A DNA stretch of 64,000 nucleotides from the NCBI RefSeq assembly GCF_000150275.1, contig NW_002060943.1:8316066-8380065 (forward strand). The letters are read 5' to 3'. This stretch comes from Trichoplax adhaerens (taxonomy: Eukaryota; Animalia; Placozoa). The notes beneath the pieces were generated by a model. It was not told the DNA's origin and searched no databases. It saw nothing but the letters and a program-made list of their open reading frames with translations. The first letter of the stretch is position 1. Every line of letters starts with the position of its first letter. Positions 1-12,385 of this stretch are shown in pieces. Both the position numbers and the translations under genes were made by a program.

Positions 1-705
1 TTTATCGTTGTATTCGACTGTTGCACCTTATTGGATCGACTGAGTTACATTGATTTTTGTACTTCTGACTTGTTGCATCTTTATGGTAGTACAGTAGTTA
101 AAGAGTGAATTTCTATTTTCATTTGATGTTATTCTTCAATAGTTCCGTCTCTAGTTTAATACTAATGTGTACTGTTTACGCACTTCGTGTATCTGATGTT
201 AACATCGCATGATGATAAAGTATGTAAACGGAATCGATCAATTTACAGGAACAAGTAATTTGATCGTAAAGACCAATTGAAGTATCGTCAGTGACATCTT
301 TTATTCATTGAGATACTTTTTTTTGACGTTGACCATTTATATGTTGTCGTTCAGTAATAAAAATGTTAATAATGTACTGTAATAATTCATTCAAGCACAA
401 GATGATCAGTTGGTCAAGCATGAAAACTTTCACTCTGTGCAAAGCACAACTGTTGATCTTGTTATTGACCAACTGTGTGTCATTCTAATTACGTTAATCT
501 TTGCTAGTTACTGGCAAATTATCCAGAGATTATACGAAAATTCAATGGACACATTTAAATTGTCCGGTAGCGAAGTAATCATAATTTCTTATAAACTACC
601 ATCGACACACAATCAAAATTATACAATTAAACTCCTTTATAGTGGACAATACTCATTGGTATTATTACCTAAAACAAAGCTATCAGCGTAGGCATTATAG
701 TGCCA

Positions 706-3700
706 ATGATGTGTACAGATGGAAATTTGCGCTACTTTGAAAGTAATGATAGGATTGACAGAAATATTTAAAAACTATTATTTCACTTTGCATCGTGTTT
801 AGTAATTGATTTGAGCATATTGGAATACTAGATTTTGTTTTAATCTTTAATTTGAATTACTAATGCAATTTCATAACTTTGATGAATCTCTCCTGTCATG
901 GGCATACGAGGTACTACCGTATGCTCTTACTTAGTAGTATACAAGTGTGCGTGGAAATGTTTACTAACAATACAAGGAACATCTTAATGAATCGTGACCA
1001 TGTTGTTTTATCATTAATAAATATGTATACTGTAGTTTGATGGTGTACTCGTATATCAATTTCAAGCTCTTGCAATAACATACTGTACTGTACAAATGCA
1101 TAACCTTACAGTATCTACAAAAATCATCTACAGTATTGTAAAATAGTTCACCACATCCACTTAACTTGTGTACAGTATGTGTACAGTTAATGCATTACTT
1201 AACTGGTACTTTGAAGCTCTCTCATTTTAAAAAGTATTTAACCTCTCATTGATATCTTTGTTGTGCTACAACTTATCGTATCATTCAATATTGGTATCAT
1301 GATTACGTGCGGTACAGTACTAACTGCTATTTAGGAACTGTAGTCAATTTTGCAAAAGCTTTTCTGCTCAGATTCGTGGAAACTATGTAATTTTACGCAT
1401 ACTCTTTCATTATCGTACCCTAACATACCCATAAATTACAGTATTTTATTAGTGTGTGTAGTAATCTCGAATTTATAGACGTGACAGTATTACGTGCTGT
1501 TAGTGACTACCGTGATGACTGTTAAGTATTTTACTTACATTTTTACTGGTATTGATCAAATTTCCATGAAACGGCTTAAACTTATATTAGTCTCGTTTGT
1601 TCCATCCTTCTGTTTGATAGTACTATTACTTGGTCACTCTGACTCTGGAAAGAAGGAACTTTATTCCTATTTTAATAAAGATTCTCCTAAGGTAGACTTT
1701 ATTAGTACGATTGGCGTAGACTATGCCGTGAAAAGTGTCAAAATCGGTTTCAAATTGGTAAAGGCTCAAATTTGGGATACCGGTAACTGATGATAGCTAG
1801 TCAGTAGCTTTATTATGTTCTATATACGTGTACTACCTGTAGTACTATCGAAATACATTGGATCTTCATTAATTCCTTCCGTGAAATATTTCGATGGATA
1901 GACATAGTAACCCTCTAACATATCACAGAACAATAATTGATCTGGTGCTAATGAAACGATAGTTCTTTCTTTGATTATCTCTTGTTAGTATCGATTGATA
2001 AAGTTTAGTAGCTCTTGCATACTGTGACTTTGTATATTAGAGGATGCATGTAGACGTTTACATTTAAAATTTTTTTACATCAAATATATAGTATTTCGGA
2101 ATAAACGGTAGTTTAAATACTCCTCCTCTTGTCCAAACCTATCAATTATTAGAGGAGTTCACTACCACAGCTGATTATGCACCTACATAGAAATATCATT
2201 TACAGTAAATTACAGATACCTTTCAGTAATTTCAAGTTTAAAGAATGATTTCTTTTATACGAGTATATCAGTTTTTTATAGCGATGATTTGTTTAAAAAT
2301 AACAGGATTGTTTTTATTGAAATCATCAGCTGTACTTCTTTTTATAGAGAGTAAATGCTAACTGTATAAAATTGTAAAAGTGTATGAGCGTAAATTACAC
2401 TTCCAATTTGAAATATTTATAATTTTGCATTTGCATTTTAGTTTATCAAGACCAATTGAAAGCAGTTAGAAGCCCGTAAGTGAATTAAATTATTTTTAAC
2501 ACTATTTCAGCCTAACTTACAAAGTATACTGTATGCGTCATACCGTCAATGTAAATAATTTTTATGAGCCAATCATGCGATACTAACATTCAGTACTGCG
2601 TATCTGGCCCCTAGGTATTATTTTCGAGGAGCAACTGGGGTTATTTTTATATTTGATGTTACCAAACGTCATACGTACGAAAATATTAGAGATTGGTTAA
2701 ATGACTCTTATGTCTACGGCGATAATAAATTGGTAACCTTATTAATTGGAAATACGAGCAAATATAATGAAGGAATGGAAAGAGCTGTGTCAAAAACTGA
2801 AGTAAAGTTTGGTAATCAGATTGAGCTATTAATTTCTGATAGCTAAGAGTAGTTTAACACTATGCTTATGTACTGTACATATAACAGAGAAATTGTCTAT
2901 TTTGCCATCAAAATATAAATGGGAGTGTAAGGATGCCTTTCAACTTTATTATCATTGCTGAATATCTGTAATGATTATGCATTCCTACTTTTAGAAAATA
3001 AAACTTCGTATTATGTGGAAACATGCATTTCTGACACTACTATTGTCGAAAGTGCATTCCAACGATTTATGGCAGGTATGATGAAATCAACTCTTATCAA
3101 ATTGTATAGGCTATAGAAATCATCGATTACGGATGCTGATCAGTAAATGCTGGTCTGGATAACATAGATTGAGCCCTTTCTTTCTATTTATAAGCTAAGC
3201 AATACTGTACATTAAATTCAGATTGCTAATATAAACTGTTATTGTCTTGACAGAGATTTATCGAAAGCAGGTAATTCGCCGCTGAGTAGGAGGATACGCG
3301 TATGATTAAACTCATTTGGCACATTTATCGTCTCCTAATGTGTAGAAATTGTGGTTGTTGGCTATTGTATTAATCATAATATTACCGTAGTATATAAATG
3401 TTGAATATTTAATGCTAACATTGTATGTTTTAATTTTTTCGTGTAGTTCGTTCATGCTATTGAGAACTCACCATTAAAATTCCATGCTCCTTTTAAAGGT
3501 ATTCTATTTAGCGATGCATTTATGATTCGATTTTACGAGATCTTGTACGATACTACTGTAGGTATCTTAATTTAATTGATACTCTAATTATAAGTATCAT
3601 GTCACGGTTTTCGATATGCCATTGAGTATATCTTTATCCAAGCGATGATTACTGTATAGATCAATATATTAGCCTAGGATATAAAATTCTCCACCAACAG

Positions 3701-5301
3701 AGTATTAATGCTAATGAACTGTAATCGTTTATTCAACCTTAGTATTATTGCTCGGTGATCCTGACTGTGAAAAATTAGATCTATACTCACAATTTGAAGG
3801 TGGTAACGTCCACACTGATTACGGTAGTACCGTTGGTGTAGACTTTACTTTCAGAAATATGCACATTGATGGTAAAATTGTTGAAGTACAAATTTGGTAT
3901 ATTAGTAAGTATCCCATATTATTTGCAGGATCATACTTGGCAGTATAAATATTGCTCATATAACAGCTTTCATTCCTGTAAAGTATCTTAATGTGGTATT
4001 AACTCTAATCGTAACAACTATAATAATTTATTTACTATATAATTATAGTGCAAATTAAATATATTTGCTACTGTTGTATGTAATTTATTATTAATAATAA
4101 TGATATTCTTTACAAAAAATTACAGCAAGTCAAAACAGATTTAGAGGACTTTATAGTTCGTAAGTATTAATAAGTAAACACTATCTATTACCCAATTTTT
4201 CATTTTCTAGAAAAAATAGTATGAAGCGTATCCTTAGCTTCTACTTTGAAGATATTACTATTGCGAAATTACGGTAGTACTAATTATTGTCTTTGCAATA
4301 TAGATATTATCGTAGTGCTGCAGGTGCATTATTGATTTATGATGTTACTAAACGGCACACTTTCCATAACGTCCGTAATTGGGTTCATGATATGATGGCA
4401 GATGCTGATGAAAATATCGTGACATTATTACTCGGTAACACCAGCACATGCAATAAAGATAATACTAGAGCGGTATCAGAGAAAGAAGCTAACAAATTCG
4501 CAGGTATTGCAAATTTTGGAATTAGTACCCTATAGTTATGATTACAGTTTAATTTTGATAGTGAACCATGATATAATCTGAATCAATTAATTACTACATT
4601 ATGAAATTTAACAGAAGGAAATGTTACATTCTTCTCTGAAATATCAATTTTGGATAACGTTGCGATTGAAAATTTATTCCGAAATTTTGTGTCAGGTACT
4701 TCTATAGCGTAATTATATAATAATTACGTCATTATTTATCGCGCTATTGCTTGCAAAAAACCCAATTACTAACACACAAGCACATCTACAATAAATATCC
4801 ATACAATTATTAGCTAGCGTAAATTACCATTGTACGACCAACAAAAAATTTACCAAATATTGTCACGGATTTCTAACAGTTTTTCTTTTAGTTACAAGTG
4901 GTATACTGTATTACCTTATTCCAATTTGCACTATTTTAGGTATCGTATGTTGGAAAGTATACGCATGATCAAGCTTCTTAATATTTCTATTGATGAGCGA
5001 AAACGTACTGTAGTTTAGTAATTTTTATAAGGATACAATTCGTAATATACGGTAGTTTCGAGTATGCAGTAACTTAGGGGAATTTCTTTGAAGAACGTGA
5101 TAGCACTTTCTTGAACAAAAATGAGATCTTTCGCTTAGATTTCTAATCCTTTTGATGAGAGAAGCTAAATCATGTTAAATAACGTATTTAGAAGCTTTCA
5201 GTATTTTGGCAGACAATCGCTTAAGTTATACTTACTCGAAACTAAATTGTTTTCCGATTTCAGAAATTTATAACCGAAGTCTGCTAAGCAAGAAAACTTA
5301 A
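706..5301 (+). CDS. Tandem double-domain Rab11-like pseudoGTPase (~364 aa); exons (706-742 tentative), 1621-1782, 2442-2475, 2615-2811, 2995-3075, 3254-3270, 3447-3498, 3743-3904, 4126-4159, 4304-4503, 4615-4695, 5264-5301
   Basis: All joins are GT-AG and phase-compatible. Rab11-type segments include STIGVDYAVKSVKIGFKLVKAQIWDT, YFRGATGVIFIFDVTKRHTYENIRDW, YYRSAAGALLIYDVTKRHTF, ADENIVTLLLGN, RAVSEKEANKFAE and EIYRKQ. The two domains have near-identical exon sizes (162/34/197/81 vs 162/34/200/81). The first exon is a guess. Confidence 0.75.
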
Positions 5302-7309
5302 ACTTAATTCACGGATTTTATACTCCTGCGTTACGATTACTATTGACTATTGTCAATTTAACTTATATCTTGCGTACAAATGTAGATTATGTCCAAATCA
5401 TCTGCTGATTAATTATTTATTTTCTAGTATAGACAATGTAAAAATATTAGCTGAATTATGCCTGAGCTACACAACGATTATGGAGACGTATTTTAAAATA
5501 TATAGATAGTACCGAATTTAAAATTAATGTAAGAGAAATGTTTATCATGGCACTTCTTTTAAATATCCTGGCAAATAAATAAATGATATAACTGAAGGTG
5601 ACCATGACTGCAAGAAACCTATCTTTAATCAATTAAGCAACAATTTTTAGTTTTTATGTTACGGTAGCTCTAATTTATTTTACTTATATTTGCGTCTCTT
5701 GCTAAATACCTTAGCTCATATCTTTACGGCAAAATAATATCCATGACTGCATTACCGGGCTTATATATTTTTCTTATATGTCATAAATGTGTATAACGTT
5801 AGCAAATTAAATTAATATCTAATTTTTCATGTGCCGAATTTTTTTGAGGTGCAATTGCCATCCCTATATTTAAGCATTTACTTCGTATATTGAAATAAAT
5901 GAACTTTTGTATTTCCATTTTATTATACAATAATAGCTGATTGCAATGTTTCAGCCGCAGAAACAATCTAACGATGGATGGCTGGCTACTCGTGAGTGTT
6001 ACGATAATCTAGACTACAGGTACTATATTGCAGCTGCGAACTCAGAAAATCAAAGTATAAGGTGAAAGATGATGCCTTTTATTTTTAAAAACGACTGAAG
6101 TGATCATTTGATTACGGAATAGATCCTGATAGCGTATTAAATCGCAACTTATTGCCTTCAAAGTCTAATTACATTATTAACCTAAATTTCTTTACCTATT
6201 TCATTCGATACCGGTATGATAATGCTGTAATCACCATTCGATGGTGAGAATTTTAAATGGTTGCTTAAGAGTTACTATTGTCTCGTATACCATAAATCCG
6301 ATATCAAGTTCTTAGTAAGCGATAGGAAAAGAGCAACATCAAGGCTTTGCAATGAATTAAGTTAATGTCTTGTTTCTGGATACAATGATGATGCGTAAAT
6401 TAGAAGGTTTATATTTCAGCATACATGCTGCAATCAGGTACTATGAGTTTAACTACAGTATGTAGGAGTCTATACAATGTGTTGGTGTAAATGATATTGG
6501 AGCATATAGTTGACGACATAATTATTGGTTTTTACTGTATGTTGGCAATAAGTTAATATTAAAATGTTTTGAAGTAAAGTCCTACTACTGCGATAGCTTC
6601 AGCTGTCCCTTGATAAACTCAGGATTACAAAATAAGAACACATAAATGAATTTATATTGCTTCTAAGCTTGAGACGAGATAATATATAATTTTAAGGAAA
6701 TCAATTCCAAAATAAATGGTACTTTGCAGTTATAGATGATAACAGAAGTAATAAAAAAAAAGTTTGAGATGTTATAAGAGCAAATCAATTGATCAATTGG
6801 CACAGATTGCAGAGTTTACTGTATGATGACAAAATTATCGTTCTATTATTGCTATTTCATGGTATTATTACAATCTGTAAAGTAGATGATAAATTATTTT
6901 TAGAAAAATGATAGGGCAATAGTTATATTCGTAATAAAGTAGTAAATGGATAGAACGCTTCCTTAGTATTTCTATAACTCGTTAATGGATTACAAATTCA
7001 CAAAAAAATAATGTCAAAAGTTCAGGAAATCGAAATGGTTAAACCAGTTTACATATGATAGTCAATAAACTGTAGTTATTTTATTGAAAGTATCAATACA
7101 TGATGTAGTAAACCGATTTTCTGATATAGCAAAATGAAATCATAATAAATTTCATATTTCAGATATTCGATATCTTTTAATCGATTAATTTAGTGATGCT
7201 TTAAAAGCTATATCATTATCATTATGAAATGACGCTGATTTAGCTTGCATGTCACATTGAATGATGTTAATTAATCTTGATGGTTACCAAATTAATTTGT
7301 GTAAGATCG

Positions 7310-10300
7310 TTACGAGTCTTGAAGTGGAGCCGTTAAGAAAGTCCAATCTTCTAATAATGACGTCGATGTAGCATGGGTTAAAAAGTGAAGTTTTAAACTC
7401 TCTTCTAGTGTAAAAACAGATCCAAAGCTAGAAACTTCAATGGAATCATCTAAGAAAGTACTAGTGGATTTTTCCACGAGATAACAAAGGAATTCTTGAC
7501 GCTTACAAATTAACCAATTAGTGACAGCATTCTGGGTTTTAGGTGGCTTATTATTGCTTTTCAACACTTCCGGTCCCCATAAAATAAATCCTAATAATCG
7601 TATCGCTCTTTCGATAGTTAAACGTTCTTCTGGTTTACGGTTTAAAAAAGCGAAAGCAATTCGTTCAATGGATTGAGACAGAGCAGAACGAATAGGTATT
7701 AGTGGTAAATCGCTAATGCGATAATCTTGCATAGCTAATTGAACAGTAGGATCTGCAAAGGGATTATCTAAATGTAACATTTCATAAATGATACATCCAG
7801 CGGCAAATTGATCACAATATTGATAATCCAGTTCAGTTGAAGTTTCATGAACATTAACAATTTCGGGCGGTAGATGTTCTGTATTGCCACCAATATTAGC
7901 TAACGCCGCATTGATGGAAATTTTGAACGGATTTTCAACACCAACTTGATGTAGTGAATAGCTAAAATTGGTTATGGATAACTCCACTGGCGCATAGAGA
8001 TCATCTTGACTTTTAACCAATAGCAAATTATCCAAGGATAAATCACGATGAACAACTTTTACACTATGCAGATATTGCAAGCCGTAACATAATTGCAATG
8101 CTAACATAACAACCGTAAATTCGTATTCTAATGGATGAACATCATGATATCTTACGCAATTATCAACATATTGCTTTACTGTGCAAATAGGCGAACAATC
8201 TAATAGAAGACATGATACTGGATTATTTAGATTGATATTAGTGGTTGAATTACGAACTAAGCTATGCATAGCTAGAGGTAATTTCTCTTTAAAATGTGCC
8301 ACCGTGGTACAGACATTGCGATGATACTGTAATGTTGTACTAACGCGTATATCATGTTTAATCAGGAGTTTTTCTGCAAAATTGGAGACATGATGTTGAT
8401 TCGGTTCGATCTATAAGAGTTGATTCAAATTCATTAGTATGAGAAAATATATCACAGTTCAATATATTATTAACAGGTTGCTTTACTGGATACTTCAAGA
8501 TACAAGTCATTATTACAACGAATTTAAGCTGTTTAAGTTAAACAAGTGGATTTTCAGCTAATATTCAATCTCTAGTGGCTTACCTTGACTGAACCCATAC
8601 ATTCACGATTAACACCGAGATTTTCTTGTCCACTAATTTTAACGCTAATATAGCAACCATGCGGTGTAATTAAGCAAGGTATACGATTATTAATGTCAGC
8701 AATCAATAATAAATCACTCCATTGAATCTTTTGATAGAAGTTGGTATTACGCTCGCTAGCTTTAACTATGGATGGCATAGCTGCTTTTTTCCATTTTTTA
8801 TTCAACTCCGTCATGGTCGCTAACTGCAATTGCGCTAGATAGGAGGTAGAATCTAAATTCGATTTTTGGAAAATTGTGAGCGGTAATGTTTCTGAAATAC
8901 TTTCCCGGGCATTGACATTATAGACCAATTCGGTAGGTACTGTGGGTGATAAAACTGATAGCACAGCATCTGAATCATTTGACTCTATCGCTTCTTCACC
9001 TGCGGCAGAGTAAACATTTTTATCCGTAAATGATAGTACTGTATAAGTCAATAAACTACATCTAGAGAAGATTATGGATAATTTGTTGGTATGTATAGTA
9101 TTACATTGAGTATAACTAGAACAAGTTAGGTACATATAATAATCTTGCTAACCTTGATCGTTAAGCATTGGTGTTAAAAGGCGAACTGGCTTGTTAAGGT
9201 TGGCAAAGAATGAAGTTTCTTTCTTGGTGGAAGCTCCTCCATCGATGAAACTCAAGACTACAAAATTTCTGTTAGCACTATTACGCCGACCTTCAGTAGG
9301 TTCACGTGATGGCTGTTTTTGCTTTTGTATAAACGGTTTTTTTGCCTCTTCTTTCACTTCTTCTTTGGTTTCGTCGCTATCTCCTGCTTGACTGGGTCGA
9401 CGTTTAGCGGAAATAGCTAGCTGTGGGCCCATAACTTTAGATCGGCGAGCGGTTCTTCTTTTCAGTCGTGATTTTATCGGCCTCTCGAAGTCGTACTTGT
9501 CGTTATCCTCCGTAATTATCTTTTGAATTTCTAACGGTTCTACATAATCATCATCGGGTATGATGCTGCTAGAACTCACTGTACTTTTTTTTTGCGATAT
9601 ATCTGCTACTTTACTCGAGGACAATATATTACTATTGCTTTTAATAGTAGAATTATCTGGGAGTTTGAACTGTTTGGATTGTGTGCCACTTGCCTTCCTA
9701 TTAGACGACGACGACGATTCTTTAGTCAAGGTAAGAAATTGTATATCATTACTTTTTTCATCTTGTAATGGCATACTGCTAGATTTTCGAAGTGGGTAAT
9801 AATCTTGAGATTCATCATTCGATAAGTTGCCAGTTGAATGAGAAAGTCCTTTAGCTGCATTTAACGTACTATCTGATCTACTATCAGAATCTTCATCTTC
9901 GCCTTCGTCAGTTTTGTTATCACTACTGTTATTGTGCTTAGCCCGACGTTTTTTAGCCCACTTCCACGGCGCTAACATACCAACAGACAATTTCTTATCT
10001 TTATTTTCTTCCGCGCTATCTACCTGGATTTGTAAGTTATTATTATTAGCTTGGCTATTATTTTGATCTTGTGATATCTGATCTTCGGAGTCGCTATTAG
10101 AAAAGGAATCTAGTCGAACATAGGGACGATTTGCAAATTCTTTGGATTCTGTTGGATCGCTATCCCGAGGTGGCACAGGTGGCAAAGGTCCTTGACGGGA
10201 AGGGGCAATTGTTTGGAAATTTTCTGTAGCTGATTCCGATACTGTAGACGATCCAACATGTAAGTGTTGACCTTGGACTGATTTCAAGATTTTCGCTGCA

Positions 10301-12385
10301 TTACCTTCGGCATTCTTAGGAATTTCAGGCAATTCTCGATTTGAAAATGATTTCGGTTTACCATCTTGAAAGGATCTTAAATCCGAAGTTGATCGTGATG
10401 TAGTGCTACTATTACTCAGGCGGTAAATACTGTCTCCCTTTGGAATTTCCGGCAATTTTCGATTATGTAATGCAACACCTTTCGCACTGTGATCATTGGA
10501 GTCTTCAGTGCGATTTCGATTTCGAGTAGGAATGCCAGTATCTAATAGATTATGAATCGTATTCCTATGTGGAGATGAAGTAGCGACACTTGCACTTCGG
10601 CTCTCTTTTGGAATTTGAGGAAGCTTCCGGTGGACCATAGTATGTGATATCTTTTCTGGTCTTGGGCGCGGTGTATGATAAGTACTTTCAATCGTTTTAG
10701 ATCTTTCCTTGAAAAAATCTTCTTCCTTTGGAAGTAAGCTATCACAACTCCGTATGCTATCCAAGGAACTAGAACTAGTTACACGAGGTCTAGAATTGAC
10801 GCTATCTACCTTAGCTGCAGATACCGCATCAGCTGTTGCGTTAGCTAGATTGGCTACTGCTGTTAAAACTGCAGCTATAAACGAGAATTGAAATAAATGA
10901 TTATGTAAATTTAAGAGAAAATATAAGTTTCCCGATTAATAATTATATTTATATGTGTATGCAACTATACATAAAATTATCGTGGCCAACCTTTATCATA
11001 AACAGGGTTGTCCTTATTTGTATCTAAAAATGGGGGAAAAAAATCAATATAGGTTAGAACCAGTACCATTAATATCGCTTTAGATTCGTTCCGTTGCCTA
11101 ATAAATTTTATTTTAATATTAACTTCAAGTTCTAGCATCTGTTTGCATACTTCAAGGTGAGCGAAGCAGCAAATATTTAACAAACTTTACATGCGCAAAT
11201 GTGAGAAATATTGGTCAGTGTAAAAGTTATACTGGAGGTTGTTGCTATAAACGAACATTTATAATTATAATTAGATCTACATTGAGATCCTACATAAAGT
11301 ATCATTTGAAATAAATATTAATAAGTGCTGTATAATATCTATTTCACCATAGTTTACAAGCATATACGTATCAGTTTGCTTAAGATCAAAATTATCCGGT
11401 CAAGGAACTTTTATTGACGGCAAGTACCAACAGGGTTGTGTTAAAAATGATAAAACAAGAGTACCATAAAATTATGACATTTTCGATGAGATTGCAACAC
11501 TTGGTAATTTTGGGCCACATGATAGGATGAAAAGTTTAAGATCTTTTTATTCTAACCGGAATGACATACAGTAATTGCTAGCGGATCTTTTATTAGAACA
11601 TTTTGCGACATTGAAAGATTTAAATTAAAATGAGTGTTTCACGATACTAAGATAAACTTTTTGATGGAGTATAGTCGCTTATACTAATTAAATTGAACCT
11701 TTAAAATTTTCTGAGTCCGATTAGGTATACAAATTTGTAGATTGATACCATATTATTTAGTGAAGTTGTTTATTACTTTTGTTCTAGTGTTGTATAACTA
11801 TACAAGTTAAAGTACGGTAAGCACATAACAATTTTGACGACTGTCATATAGTTTGGTCTAAATAAAAAAACCTTCAAATTGACAAATGTCAATTAGTAAA
11901 CTTATGATAAACAGTAGCAGAATATTTATCCGTCCTAGCATGCTAGATTAACGTACAAAATGTTAAAATGAAGTGATATAGCCGATTAACTAGATTGGAA
12001 AAGCTTAGCTTGCCTGACATCAGTAGTGACACATTCTATAAATAATATGCGCATTACTATATGGCGCTAATTTGATCGTGATACCAATTAACCTACTAAA
12101 TAACCATCAAACTATTTATGTATTATTATATTATGAATACTCCTACACCATATATTCTATACGAATATTGCTCTAATTTACCTTGTAAACCTGTTTTCAA
12201 CGATTCGGTAAGATTTGTTGTTTGATCGTTTTTTTCAGACATTCTATTTGTACTTCTAATCAAAGGTAGTTTTAATATTTGCTTTAGTTAGTGAACTTCA
12301 TAGCAGAAAGGAATATGAAAATAACTGAAAGTTTCGGATACCTAATAGCAGCAACGTCATCATAAATAGAGGAAGACTGACTCAT
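7310..12385 (-). CDS. PEAK1/PRAG1 (SgK269/SgK223, NKF3) family pseudokinase, ~1131 aa; exons 12385-12342, 12255-12182, 10874-9153, 9038-8584, 8410-7310
   Basis: Kinase fold with LQLCYGLQYLH..VVHRDLSLDNLLL, DFG replaced by NFS, DQFAAGCIIYEMLHLDNPF and LWGP. C-terminal helices NWLICKR...LEESLKLHFL resemble the PEAK SHED module. The long low-complexity N-terminus carries PxxP and YxxP motifs. Exon phases are consistent; the true 5' start is less certain. Confidence 0.85.

What the first reader, a model, noticed from the sequence alone, without database searches (positions are those of the whole stretch)
1621..5301. Two Rab11-derived domains fused in one polypeptide by a 17-nt plus 52-nt exon linker
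Seen: what looks like two Rab genes can be spliced into one ORF. Exon 3254-3270 (EIYRKQ) ends at CAG|GTAATT in phase 0. It joins exon 3447-3498 (FVHAIENSPLKFHAPFK|V), which has a good acceptor, an in-frame TAG immediately before it and no in-frame ATG, so the second domain appears to lack its own start. Exon sizes repeat almost exactly between the halves (162/34/197/81 vs 162/34/200/81), indicating whole-gene tandem duplication followed by fusion. Established: Rabs are normally single-domain; tandem small-GTPase architectures (e.g. Miro) are rare. Inference: a lineage-specific bivalent Rab11-like scaffold. Retaining the intron after 3270 would give a single-domain isoform ending EIYRKQVIRR*.
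Basis: partly seen in the sequence, partly recalled or inferred. Interest (0 to 1): 0.8.

Follow-up and report, generated by a model that had tools for sequence, protein, structure and literature searches.

The report
Fused double pseudo-Rab11 gene in Trichoplax
In the placozoan Trichoplax, two tandem copies of a Rab11-derived gene have merged into one gene for a 365-residue protein with two GTPase-like domains that have lost the GTP-binding motifs; a distant placozoan keeps the same exon plan, but no RNA or protein data were available.

Summary
The window is Trichoplax adhaerens. The listed exons splice into one open frame with two Ras-family domains joined by a 17-nt and a 52-nt exon.

Two independent lines support a real fusion.
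- The MAKER model of Trichoplax sp. H2 (RDD46586.1, 384 aa) has the same junction.
- Genomic Logan contigs from a much more distant relative, about 66% protein identity, keep all ten exons. Sizes, splice sites and phases are identical, the alignment is gap-free, and dN/dS is 0.18.

In neither species does the second half have a usable start codon.

The parent is the canonical Rab11 gene 114 kb away, which has the same exon plan. The 52-nt exon is the old first exon of copy 2. Its ATG is now ATT, and 12 nt of former leader have become coding.

Corrections to existing models:
- The true start is probably an exon 450-489 nt before the window.
- The JGI model TRIADDRAFT_19167 is a chimera of both halves.
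- The H2 model's longer linker exon is not conserved.

Both domains lack intact G1, G3 and G4 motifs and a prenylation site, so they are pseudoGTPases. No RNA evidence could be reached, and the function is inferred only.

The parts
1..1620 (+). 3' part of intron 0. The probable first coding exon (13 codons plus 1 nt, ending FK then G|GTACGT) lies 489-450 nt before the window start, at L012:9511-9550 = G000:C1414:8315576-8315615.
   Evidence: It has the same 40-nt coding length and phase as exon 1 of the canonical Rab11 gene and is identical in H2. The annotated unspliced ATG at 1566 is not conserved: the other species has an in-frame TAA there.
1621..1782 (+). Exon 1 (162 nt): domain 1, P-loop to switch II
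   Evidence: Ras E 2.7e-08; ortholog 72.5% identical
2442..2475 (+). Exon 2 (34 nt), domain 1
2615..2811 (+). Exon 3 (197 nt), domain 1, with NTSK in place of NKxD
2995..3075 (+). Exon 4 (81 nt), domain 1, G5 region and last helix
3254..3270 (+). Exon 5, a 17-nt micro-exon (EIYRKQ). It is the remnant of the last exon of copy 1, now ending at a new donor.
   Evidence: 16 of 17 nt are identical in the other species and both splice sites are kept. The canonical Rab11 last exon starts EIY at the same intron position.
3271..3446 (+). Intron 5, the fusion intron. It replaces the former 3' end of copy 1, the spacer, and the 5' end of copy 2.
   Evidence: 176 nt here and 161 nt in the other species. 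Only its 3' end aligns between the species.
3447..3498 (+). Exon 6, the 52-nt linker exon: 12 nt of former leader plus the 40-nt former first coding exon of copy 2. The old ATG is now ATT.
   Evidence: Same 52 nt and same phase in the other species; dN/dS 0.21; a conserved island in otherwise unalignable sequence.
3499..3560 (+). Optional extension used by the H2 gene model (later donor, +21 aa). Probably intron.
   Evidence: It carries an in-frame stop in the other species and the alignment ends 5 nt past 3498. It also holds one non-synonymous H1/H2 difference, at 3505.
3743..3904 (+). Exon 7 (162 nt): domain 2, degenerate P-loop to switch II
   Evidence: Ras E 2.2e-06; ortholog 73.6% identical
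4126..4159 (+). Exon 8 (34 nt), domain 2
4304..4503 (+). Exon 9 (200 nt), domain 2, with NTST in place of NKxD
   Evidence: (Ras E 6e-14)
4615..4695 (+). Exon 10 (81 nt), domain 2
   Evidence: The donor is kept in the other species.
5264..5301 (+). Probable last coding exon (E-IYNRSLLSKKT, then stop). It holds no cysteine.
   Evidence: The intron position and the EIY start match the canonical Rab11 last exon and exon 5. It is not in either public model and could not be checked in the other species.
5574..5579 (+). First AATAAA after the stop codon
   Evidence: Pattern match only.

Best explanation
This is one gene of Trichoplax adhaerens that encodes a protein of about 365 residues with two Rab11-derived small-GTPase-like domains in tandem.

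History (inferred):
1. A duplicate of the canonical Rab11 gene diverged and lost its NKxD motif and the P-loop Ser/Thr.
2. That gene duplicated in tandem.
3. The two copies fused. A donor arose 17 nt into the last exon of copy 1, and an acceptor arose 12 nt upstream of the start codon of copy 2. That ATG became ATT.
4. A 176-nt intron now removes the old stop codon, the spacer and the old 5' end of copy 2.

The fusion predates the split between Trichoplax and a distant placozoan lineage, and both halves and the linker are under purifying selection.

Mechanism (inferred): both domains lack the residues needed for Mg2+/GTP binding and guanine recognition, and there is no prenylation cysteine. 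The product most likely acts as a soluble, nucleotide-independent double Rab-fold adaptor. It would not be a membrane-anchored switch.
For: Shown:
- The exons form a single ORF.
- There are two Pfam Ras matches.
- The best solved-structure matches are Rab11B and Rab11A, E about 1e-34.
- The canonical Rab11 gene, 114 kb away, has the same intron positions and phases.
- The H2 MAKER model has the same exon 5 to exon 6 junction.
- In the ortholog on L015 and L016, 10 of 10 exons have the same length, the AG and GT sites are kept, and the 339-codon alignment is gap-free. Protein identity is 66%, dS is 1.06 and dN/dS is 0.18 overall; it is 0.15 for domain 1, 0.27 for the linker and 0.21 for domain 2.
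- Similarity between the species is confined to the exons.
- From the linker on, the first in-frame Met shared by both species lies 96 residues into domain 2.
- D1 orthologs pair and D2 orthologs pair, and all four form one clade (SH-aLRT 99) beside Rab11/RABA.
- G1, G3 and G4 are degenerate in both domains of both species.
- The AlphaFold2 model shows two folded alpha/beta domains and a low-confidence linker, with pTM 0.51.
Against: - No RNA or protein evidence for the 3270/3447 junction could be reached. Searches at 100-318 aa and 211-672 aa found no transcript-derived ORF of this gene.
- The MAKER model may rest on protein homology, not on reads.
- Public models disagree on the start, the linker donor and the end.
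- Frame-compatible single-domain isoforms remain possible.
- The first and last exons are not confirmed in a second species.
- Loss of nucleotide binding is read from motifs only.
- The identity of the organism behind SRR30664516/7 is inferred, not known.
Confidence: 0.8

Rival explanations
1. One locus whose main products are single-domain proteins made by alternative splicing or processing. The possible routes are intron-5 retention (domain 1 ending QVIRR), exon 0 spliced straight to exon 7 (domain 2 alone), and hybrid domains such as exon 1 joined to exon 8 as in the JGI model. The fused form would then be minor.
For: The tandem halves share phases, so all these joins keep the frame. An ATTAAA lies 20 nt after the retention stop. 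The JGI model is exactly an exon 1 to exon 8 join.
Against: Exon 6 has no role in any of these isoforms. Yet its length, phase, splice sites and coding sequence are conserved at dS of about 1. The ATTAAA is absent from the other species' intron 5. The JGI model looks like a homology-guided best fit to a single Rab.
Confidence: 0.1
2. Two separate tandem paralogous genes, merged by gene predictors. This artefact is common for tandem Rab11 duplicates in databases.
For: Many two-Rab 'proteins' among the hits are plainly merged or duplicated models, for example P0004, P0008 and P0156. No transcript evidence exists here.
Against: Domain 2 has no start codon. Exon 6 follows an in-frame TAG and holds no ATG in either species, and the old ATG is ATT in both. 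The only Trichoplax ATG that could serve, in the 3499-3560 extension, sits in a stretch that carries an in-frame stop in the other species. The spacer is only 176 nt and is bounded by conserved splice sites.
Confidence: 0.07
3. A decaying duplicate, that is a pseudogene or pseudogene pair, of Rab11.
For: All G motifs are degenerate, there is no prenylation signal, and no expression data could be found.
Against: The frames are open over 339 aligned codons in two lineages at dS of about 1, with dN/dS 0.18, no indels in exons, and all 20 splice sites kept.
Confidence: 0.03

Closest known systems
Rab11 subfamily (Rab11A/B, Rab25, yeast Ypt31/32, plant RABA)
   Same: Best sequence matches. Sister position in the tree. 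Intron positions and phases identical to the canonical Trichoplax Rab11 gene. Rab-family sequence remnants such as the IGVD and YYR stretches.
   Different: Two domains in one chain. The P-loop Ser/Thr is replaced. DxxGQ is broken. NKxD is replaced by NTSx. There is no C-terminal cysteine motif. Identity to Rab11 is only about 41%.
Tandem pseudoGTPase domains of p190RhoGAP (PMC5593906)
   Same: Two adjacent GTPase-fold domains. In p190RhoGAP these were reported as pseudoGTPase domains (title and abstract seen). The motifs here predict the same.
   Different: The p190 domains sit inside a large RhoGAP protein and are not Rab-derived. Here the two domains make up nearly the whole protein. Nucleotide binding is untested here.
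Miro (two GTPase domains around EF-hands; from my own knowledge)
   Same: Two small-GTPase-like domains in one polypeptide.
   Different: Miro has EF-hands between the domains and a membrane anchor, and its two domains are of unlike origin. Here the linker is 23 residues, Pfam finds nothing but GTPase families, and the halves are paralogs.
Other multi-Rab-domain database proteins, e.g. Myzus persicae XP_022182367.1 (P0021), Rotaria P0006, Solemya P0003 and Postia P0014
   Same: Two to four Ras/Rab domains in one predicted chain.
   Different: They are unrelated lineages, most have intact GTPase motifs, most are unvalidated predictions, and none is an ortholog.
AAGAB N-terminal pseudoGTPase (PMC12490416)
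   Same: A GTPase-fold domain reported to act through protein-protein interaction, not as a switch (abstract). This is the model for the mechanism proposed here.
   Different: It is a single domain with no sequence relationship shown here.

Membership tests
Rab11 subfamily of Rab GTPases | Ras-family GTPase fold / Pfam PF00071 | tested here: met
   (two stretches, 203 bits). The AlphaFold2 model has two alpha/beta domains.
Rab11 subfamily of Rab GTPases | Closest relatives are Rab11/Rab25/Ypt31-32/RABA | tested here: met
   Rab11A/B at 123 bits against Rab43 at 106 and Rab8 at 101. The tree is (SH-aLRT 90; long branches, so moderate weight).
Rab11 subfamily of Rab GTPases | G1 P-loop GxxxxGK[S/T] | tested here: not met
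   The final Ser/Thr is K or R in domain 1 and L in domain 2. Domain 2 of T. adhaerens also lacks the second Gly.
Rab11 subfamily of Rab GTPases | G3 DxxGQ and G4 NKxD | tested here: not met
   G3 reads DTVYQ or DAGHQ in domain 1 and YITSQ or YITGQ in domain 2. G4 is NTSx in both domains of both species.
Rab11 subfamily of Rab GTPases | C-terminal cysteine prenylation motif | tested here: not met
   The proposed end and both public models hold no C-terminal Cys. The canonical Trichoplax Rab11 ends in CC.
PseudoGTPase | GTPase fold with motifs for nucleotide binding or hydrolysis lost, yet kept under selection | tested here: met
   Motifs; dN/dS 0.18.
PseudoGTPase | Demonstrated lack of GTP binding or hydrolysis | not testable with these tools
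   This needs a recombinant protein and a nucleotide-binding assay.
Miro-type tandem GTPase | EF-hand pair between the GTPase domains and a C-terminal membrane anchor | tested here: not met
   The linker is 23 residues. Pfam lists only Ras, Roc, Arf and Gtr1.

The most novel reading that the evidence does not exclude
A tandem pseudo-Rab11, so far found only in placozoan-type genomes and conserved there for a long time, acts as a nucleotide-independent bivalent adaptor. Because its two halves keep identical exon phases, it can also yield hybrid single domains by skipping between paralogous exons. The exon 1 to exon 8 join of the JGI model would be one example. That would be a domain-shuffling switch built into one gene.
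Probability: 0.12. Interest if true: 0.75.

Novelty: new variant of a known kind. Interest (0 to 1): 0.45.

Why it matters
This is a clean, datable example of how two tandem paralogs become one gene. The lost start codon (ATG to ATT), the recruited 12 nt of leader and the new 176-nt intron can each be pointed to, and the parent gene sits nearby for comparison.

It adds a Rab-derived tandem member to the small set of pseudoGTPases. It also corrects three public gene models, one of which (JGI) is a chimera of the two halves. That matters for counts of Rab genes in early-branching animals.

The fused architecture is already in GenBank as an unremarked H2 model. I found no paper that discusses it. 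The biological role is unknown.

Tried and rejected
- The joined spliced model was never sent to any search or folding tool. Exon pieces were searched by reference, and the public H2 protein P0162 stood in for the whole. Inside scripts the exons were joined only for frame checks, dN/dS, the motif alignment and the tree.
I rebuilt that sequence from locus coordinates instead.
- My first Pfam and alignment calls used the wrong frame for exons 4 and 10. I corrected this. These 26-aa pieces alone still give no Pfam hit.
- Rfam and tRNA scans of the window found nothing.
- The bacterial-type promoter and terminator scan is not meaningful for a eukaryote.
- RNA evidence: no transcript-derived ORFs of this gene at 100-318 aa or 211-672 aa. 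An exact look-up of the JGI model found no contig.
- No ortholog model from Hoilungia or any other named placozoan appeared in those length ranges.
- H1 against H2 is too close (99.3% identity; 3 synonymous and 2 non-synonymous changes in the core CDS) to test selection.
- Gapped global intron identities were not discriminating, so local alignment was used instead.
- A spliced-leader AUG donated to exon 6 was considered. It would be in frame. I rejected it because, from my own knowledge, trans-splicing is not reported for placozoans.
- Literature searches for tandem Rab proteins or for this locus found nothing.
Full report
**Organism and setting**

The window is AT-rich (about 31% GC) and eukaryotic. 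Its assembly has 105.6 Mb in 1414 contigs. The best protein hit is TRIADDRAFT_19167 of Trichoplax adhaerens, as earlier notes of this scan had suggested. The window is G000:C1414:8316066-8380065.

**Observation**

I re-derived the exon boundaries from the sequence. They are 1621-1782, 2442-2475, 2615-2811, 2995-3075, 3254-3270, 3447-3498, 3743-3904, 4126-4159, 4304-4503, 4615-4695 and 5264-5301. All have AG acceptors, all but the terminal exon have GT donors, and they join into one frame that ends in TAA.

- The 17-nt exon ends in phase 0.
- The 52-nt exon follows a TAG acceptor and holds no in-frame ATG.
- Pfam Ras matches the large exons of both halves.

The joined model was not sent to any search or folding tool. 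Pieces were searched by reference, and joining was done only inside scripts.

**Existing models**

- The JGI model (P0001, 182 aa) starts at an unspliced ATG at 1566. It then joins exon 1 directly to exon 8 and reads through the donor at 4695. It is therefore a chimera of the first 72 residues of half 1 and the rest of half 2.
It uses a later donor after exon 6, which adds 21 residues. It has the same start and the same read-through end as the JGI model.
- MAKER was given Trinity and Cufflinks transcripts and also protein evidence (PMC6057997). This model is therefore independent support but not proof of RNA.
- Pfam finds two Ras stretches in the H2 model.

**Comparative test**

A whole-library phmmer search with exon 9 turned up an 87-aa ORF, P0108. 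It is the exon 3 ortholog in a different genome.

Its Logan contig L015 (SRR30664517) and the overlapping L016 (SRR30664516; 99.75% identical in the overlap) carry the orthologous locus.

- All ten exons from exon 1 to exon 10 are present, with the same lengths (162/34/197/81/17/52/162/34/200/81), the same AG and GT sites and the same phases. They give a gap-free alignment of 339 codons.
- Protein identity is 66%, dS is 1.06 and dN/dS is 0.18. By part, dN/dS is 0.15 for domain 1, 0.27 for the linker, 0.21 for exon 6 alone and 0.21 for domain 2.
- All nine introns differ in length.
- Local nucleotide similarity is confined to the exons and their immediate flanks. The block around exon 6 stops 5 nt after 3498.
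- The 17-nt exon is 16/17 identical.

Other points from the comparison:

- The H2 model's 62-nt extension has an in-frame stop in the other species.
- Exon 6 has no ATG in either species.
- From the linker on, the first in-frame Met shared by both species lies 96 residues into domain 2. A complete second domain therefore cannot be translated on its own.
- The annotated start at 1566 is not conserved either, because the other species has an in-frame TAA just upstream of exon 1.

H1 against H2 is too close to be informative (99.3% identity). The organism behind the SRA runs is not known to me. Orthology of the whole exon plan argues for a distant placozoan.

**Origin**

The third-best genomic match to exon 9 lies 114 kb downstream on the other strand. 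It is the canonical Trichoplax Rab11 gene.

- Its coding exons are 40/162/34/194/81 plus a last exon that starts EIY and ends in CC. These are the intron positions and phases of each half of the tandem gene.
- A scan upstream of the window for an ATG-started exon with a phase-1 donor found one candidate of exactly 13 codons plus one base. It ends in FK and a G before GTACGT, and lies at L012:9511-9550. It matches the canonical first exon in length and at 6 of 13 residues, and it is identical in H2. I take it as the true first exon, with confidence about 0.75.
- With this exon and exon 11, the model is 1098 nt, or 365 codons.
- The last 40 nt of exon 6 align with that ancestral first exon. The position of the old ATG reads ATT in both species, and 12 nt of former leader are now coding.
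- Exon 5 is the start of the old last exon of copy 1, cut short by a new donor.

In a tree, the D1 orthologs pair and the D2 orthologs pair. All four form one clade (SH-aLRT 99), which sits beside the Rab11/RABA group (SH-aLRT 90) and away from Rab1, Rab10/13 and Rab19. The long branches call for caution. Rows were a random subset of 35 hits plus named references.

D1 and D2 are 42% identical to each other and about 41% identical to Rab11. They share the derived NTS in place of NKxD. The likely order of events is Rab11 duplicate, then motif loss, then tandem duplication, then fusion, then the split of the two lineages.

**What the protein is**

The best solved-structure matches are Rab11B and Rab11A (E about 1e-34), followed by RABA1a, Ypt31/32 and Rab25.

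In both domains of both species, three of the five G motifs lack a key residue:

- The P-loop lacks its Ser/Thr.
- DxxGQ is broken.
- NKxD reads NTSx.

No version of the C-terminus has a cysteine.

AlphaFold2 was run on the H2 protein with a 58-row alignment. It gives two folded alpha/beta domains with mean pLDDT 77.7. The linker has low confidence and pTM is 0.51, so the model predicts no fixed arrangement of the two domains.

I infer a soluble, nucleotide-independent double Rab-fold adaptor. That step is inference only.

**Context and novelty**

Multi-Rab-domain predictions occur in other lineages, including aphid, rotifer, bivalve and fungi. Many are merged models. Tandem pseudoGTPase domains are known in p190RhoGAP, and a pseudoGTPase that mediates protein-protein interactions is described for AAGAB.

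I found no paper on this locus or on natural Rab-Rab tandems. The scan's other note on this stretch (s1-763406, pseudoGTPase and no prenylation) agrees with what I found.

**Verdict**

This is a real gene fusion, supported by comparative evidence and an independent annotation. It is a new variant of known kinds (Rab11 paralog, pseudoGTPase, tandem GTPase). It still lacks RNA, protein and functional evidence.

Noticed in passing
window 1566-4716 (JGI model TRIADDRAFT_19167 / XP_002108109.1): The public T. adhaerens model is a chimera. It joins exon 1 of domain 1 directly to exon 8 of domain 2, skipping six exons that are conserved as coding, and it reads through the donor at 4695.
   Followed up: yes
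G000:C1414 about 8428000-8438000, minus strand (L013): The canonical Rab11 gene of Trichoplax lies 114 kb downstream of the tandem gene. It has the same exon plan, with coding exons 40/162/34/194/81 plus a last exon ending in CC.
   Followed up: yes
L015:1-200: In the other species, the 200 nt upstream of exon 1 consist of about 2.7 tandem copies of a unit of about 70 nt. The region holds no counterpart of the Trichoplax ATG at 1566.
   Followed up: no
whole window: The words TACTGTA and TACAGTA occur 50 and 43 times, against about 7 expected from base composition. TACTGTA is the third most frequent 7-mer, among otherwise pure A/T words. The cause is unknown.
   Followed up: partly
window about 7300-10700, minus strand: In the H2 annotation the downstream neighbour is a large protein-kinase gene on the opposite strand, with a product of 1129 aa running off the fetched locus.
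   Followed up: no
P0021/P0336 (Myzus persicae XP_022182367.1, XP_022182365.1): Aphid RefSeq models named 'LRRK2-like' are in fact about 400-aa proteins with two Rab-like domains and no C-terminal cysteine. This may be an independent case of a tandem Rab-like protein.
   Followed up: no
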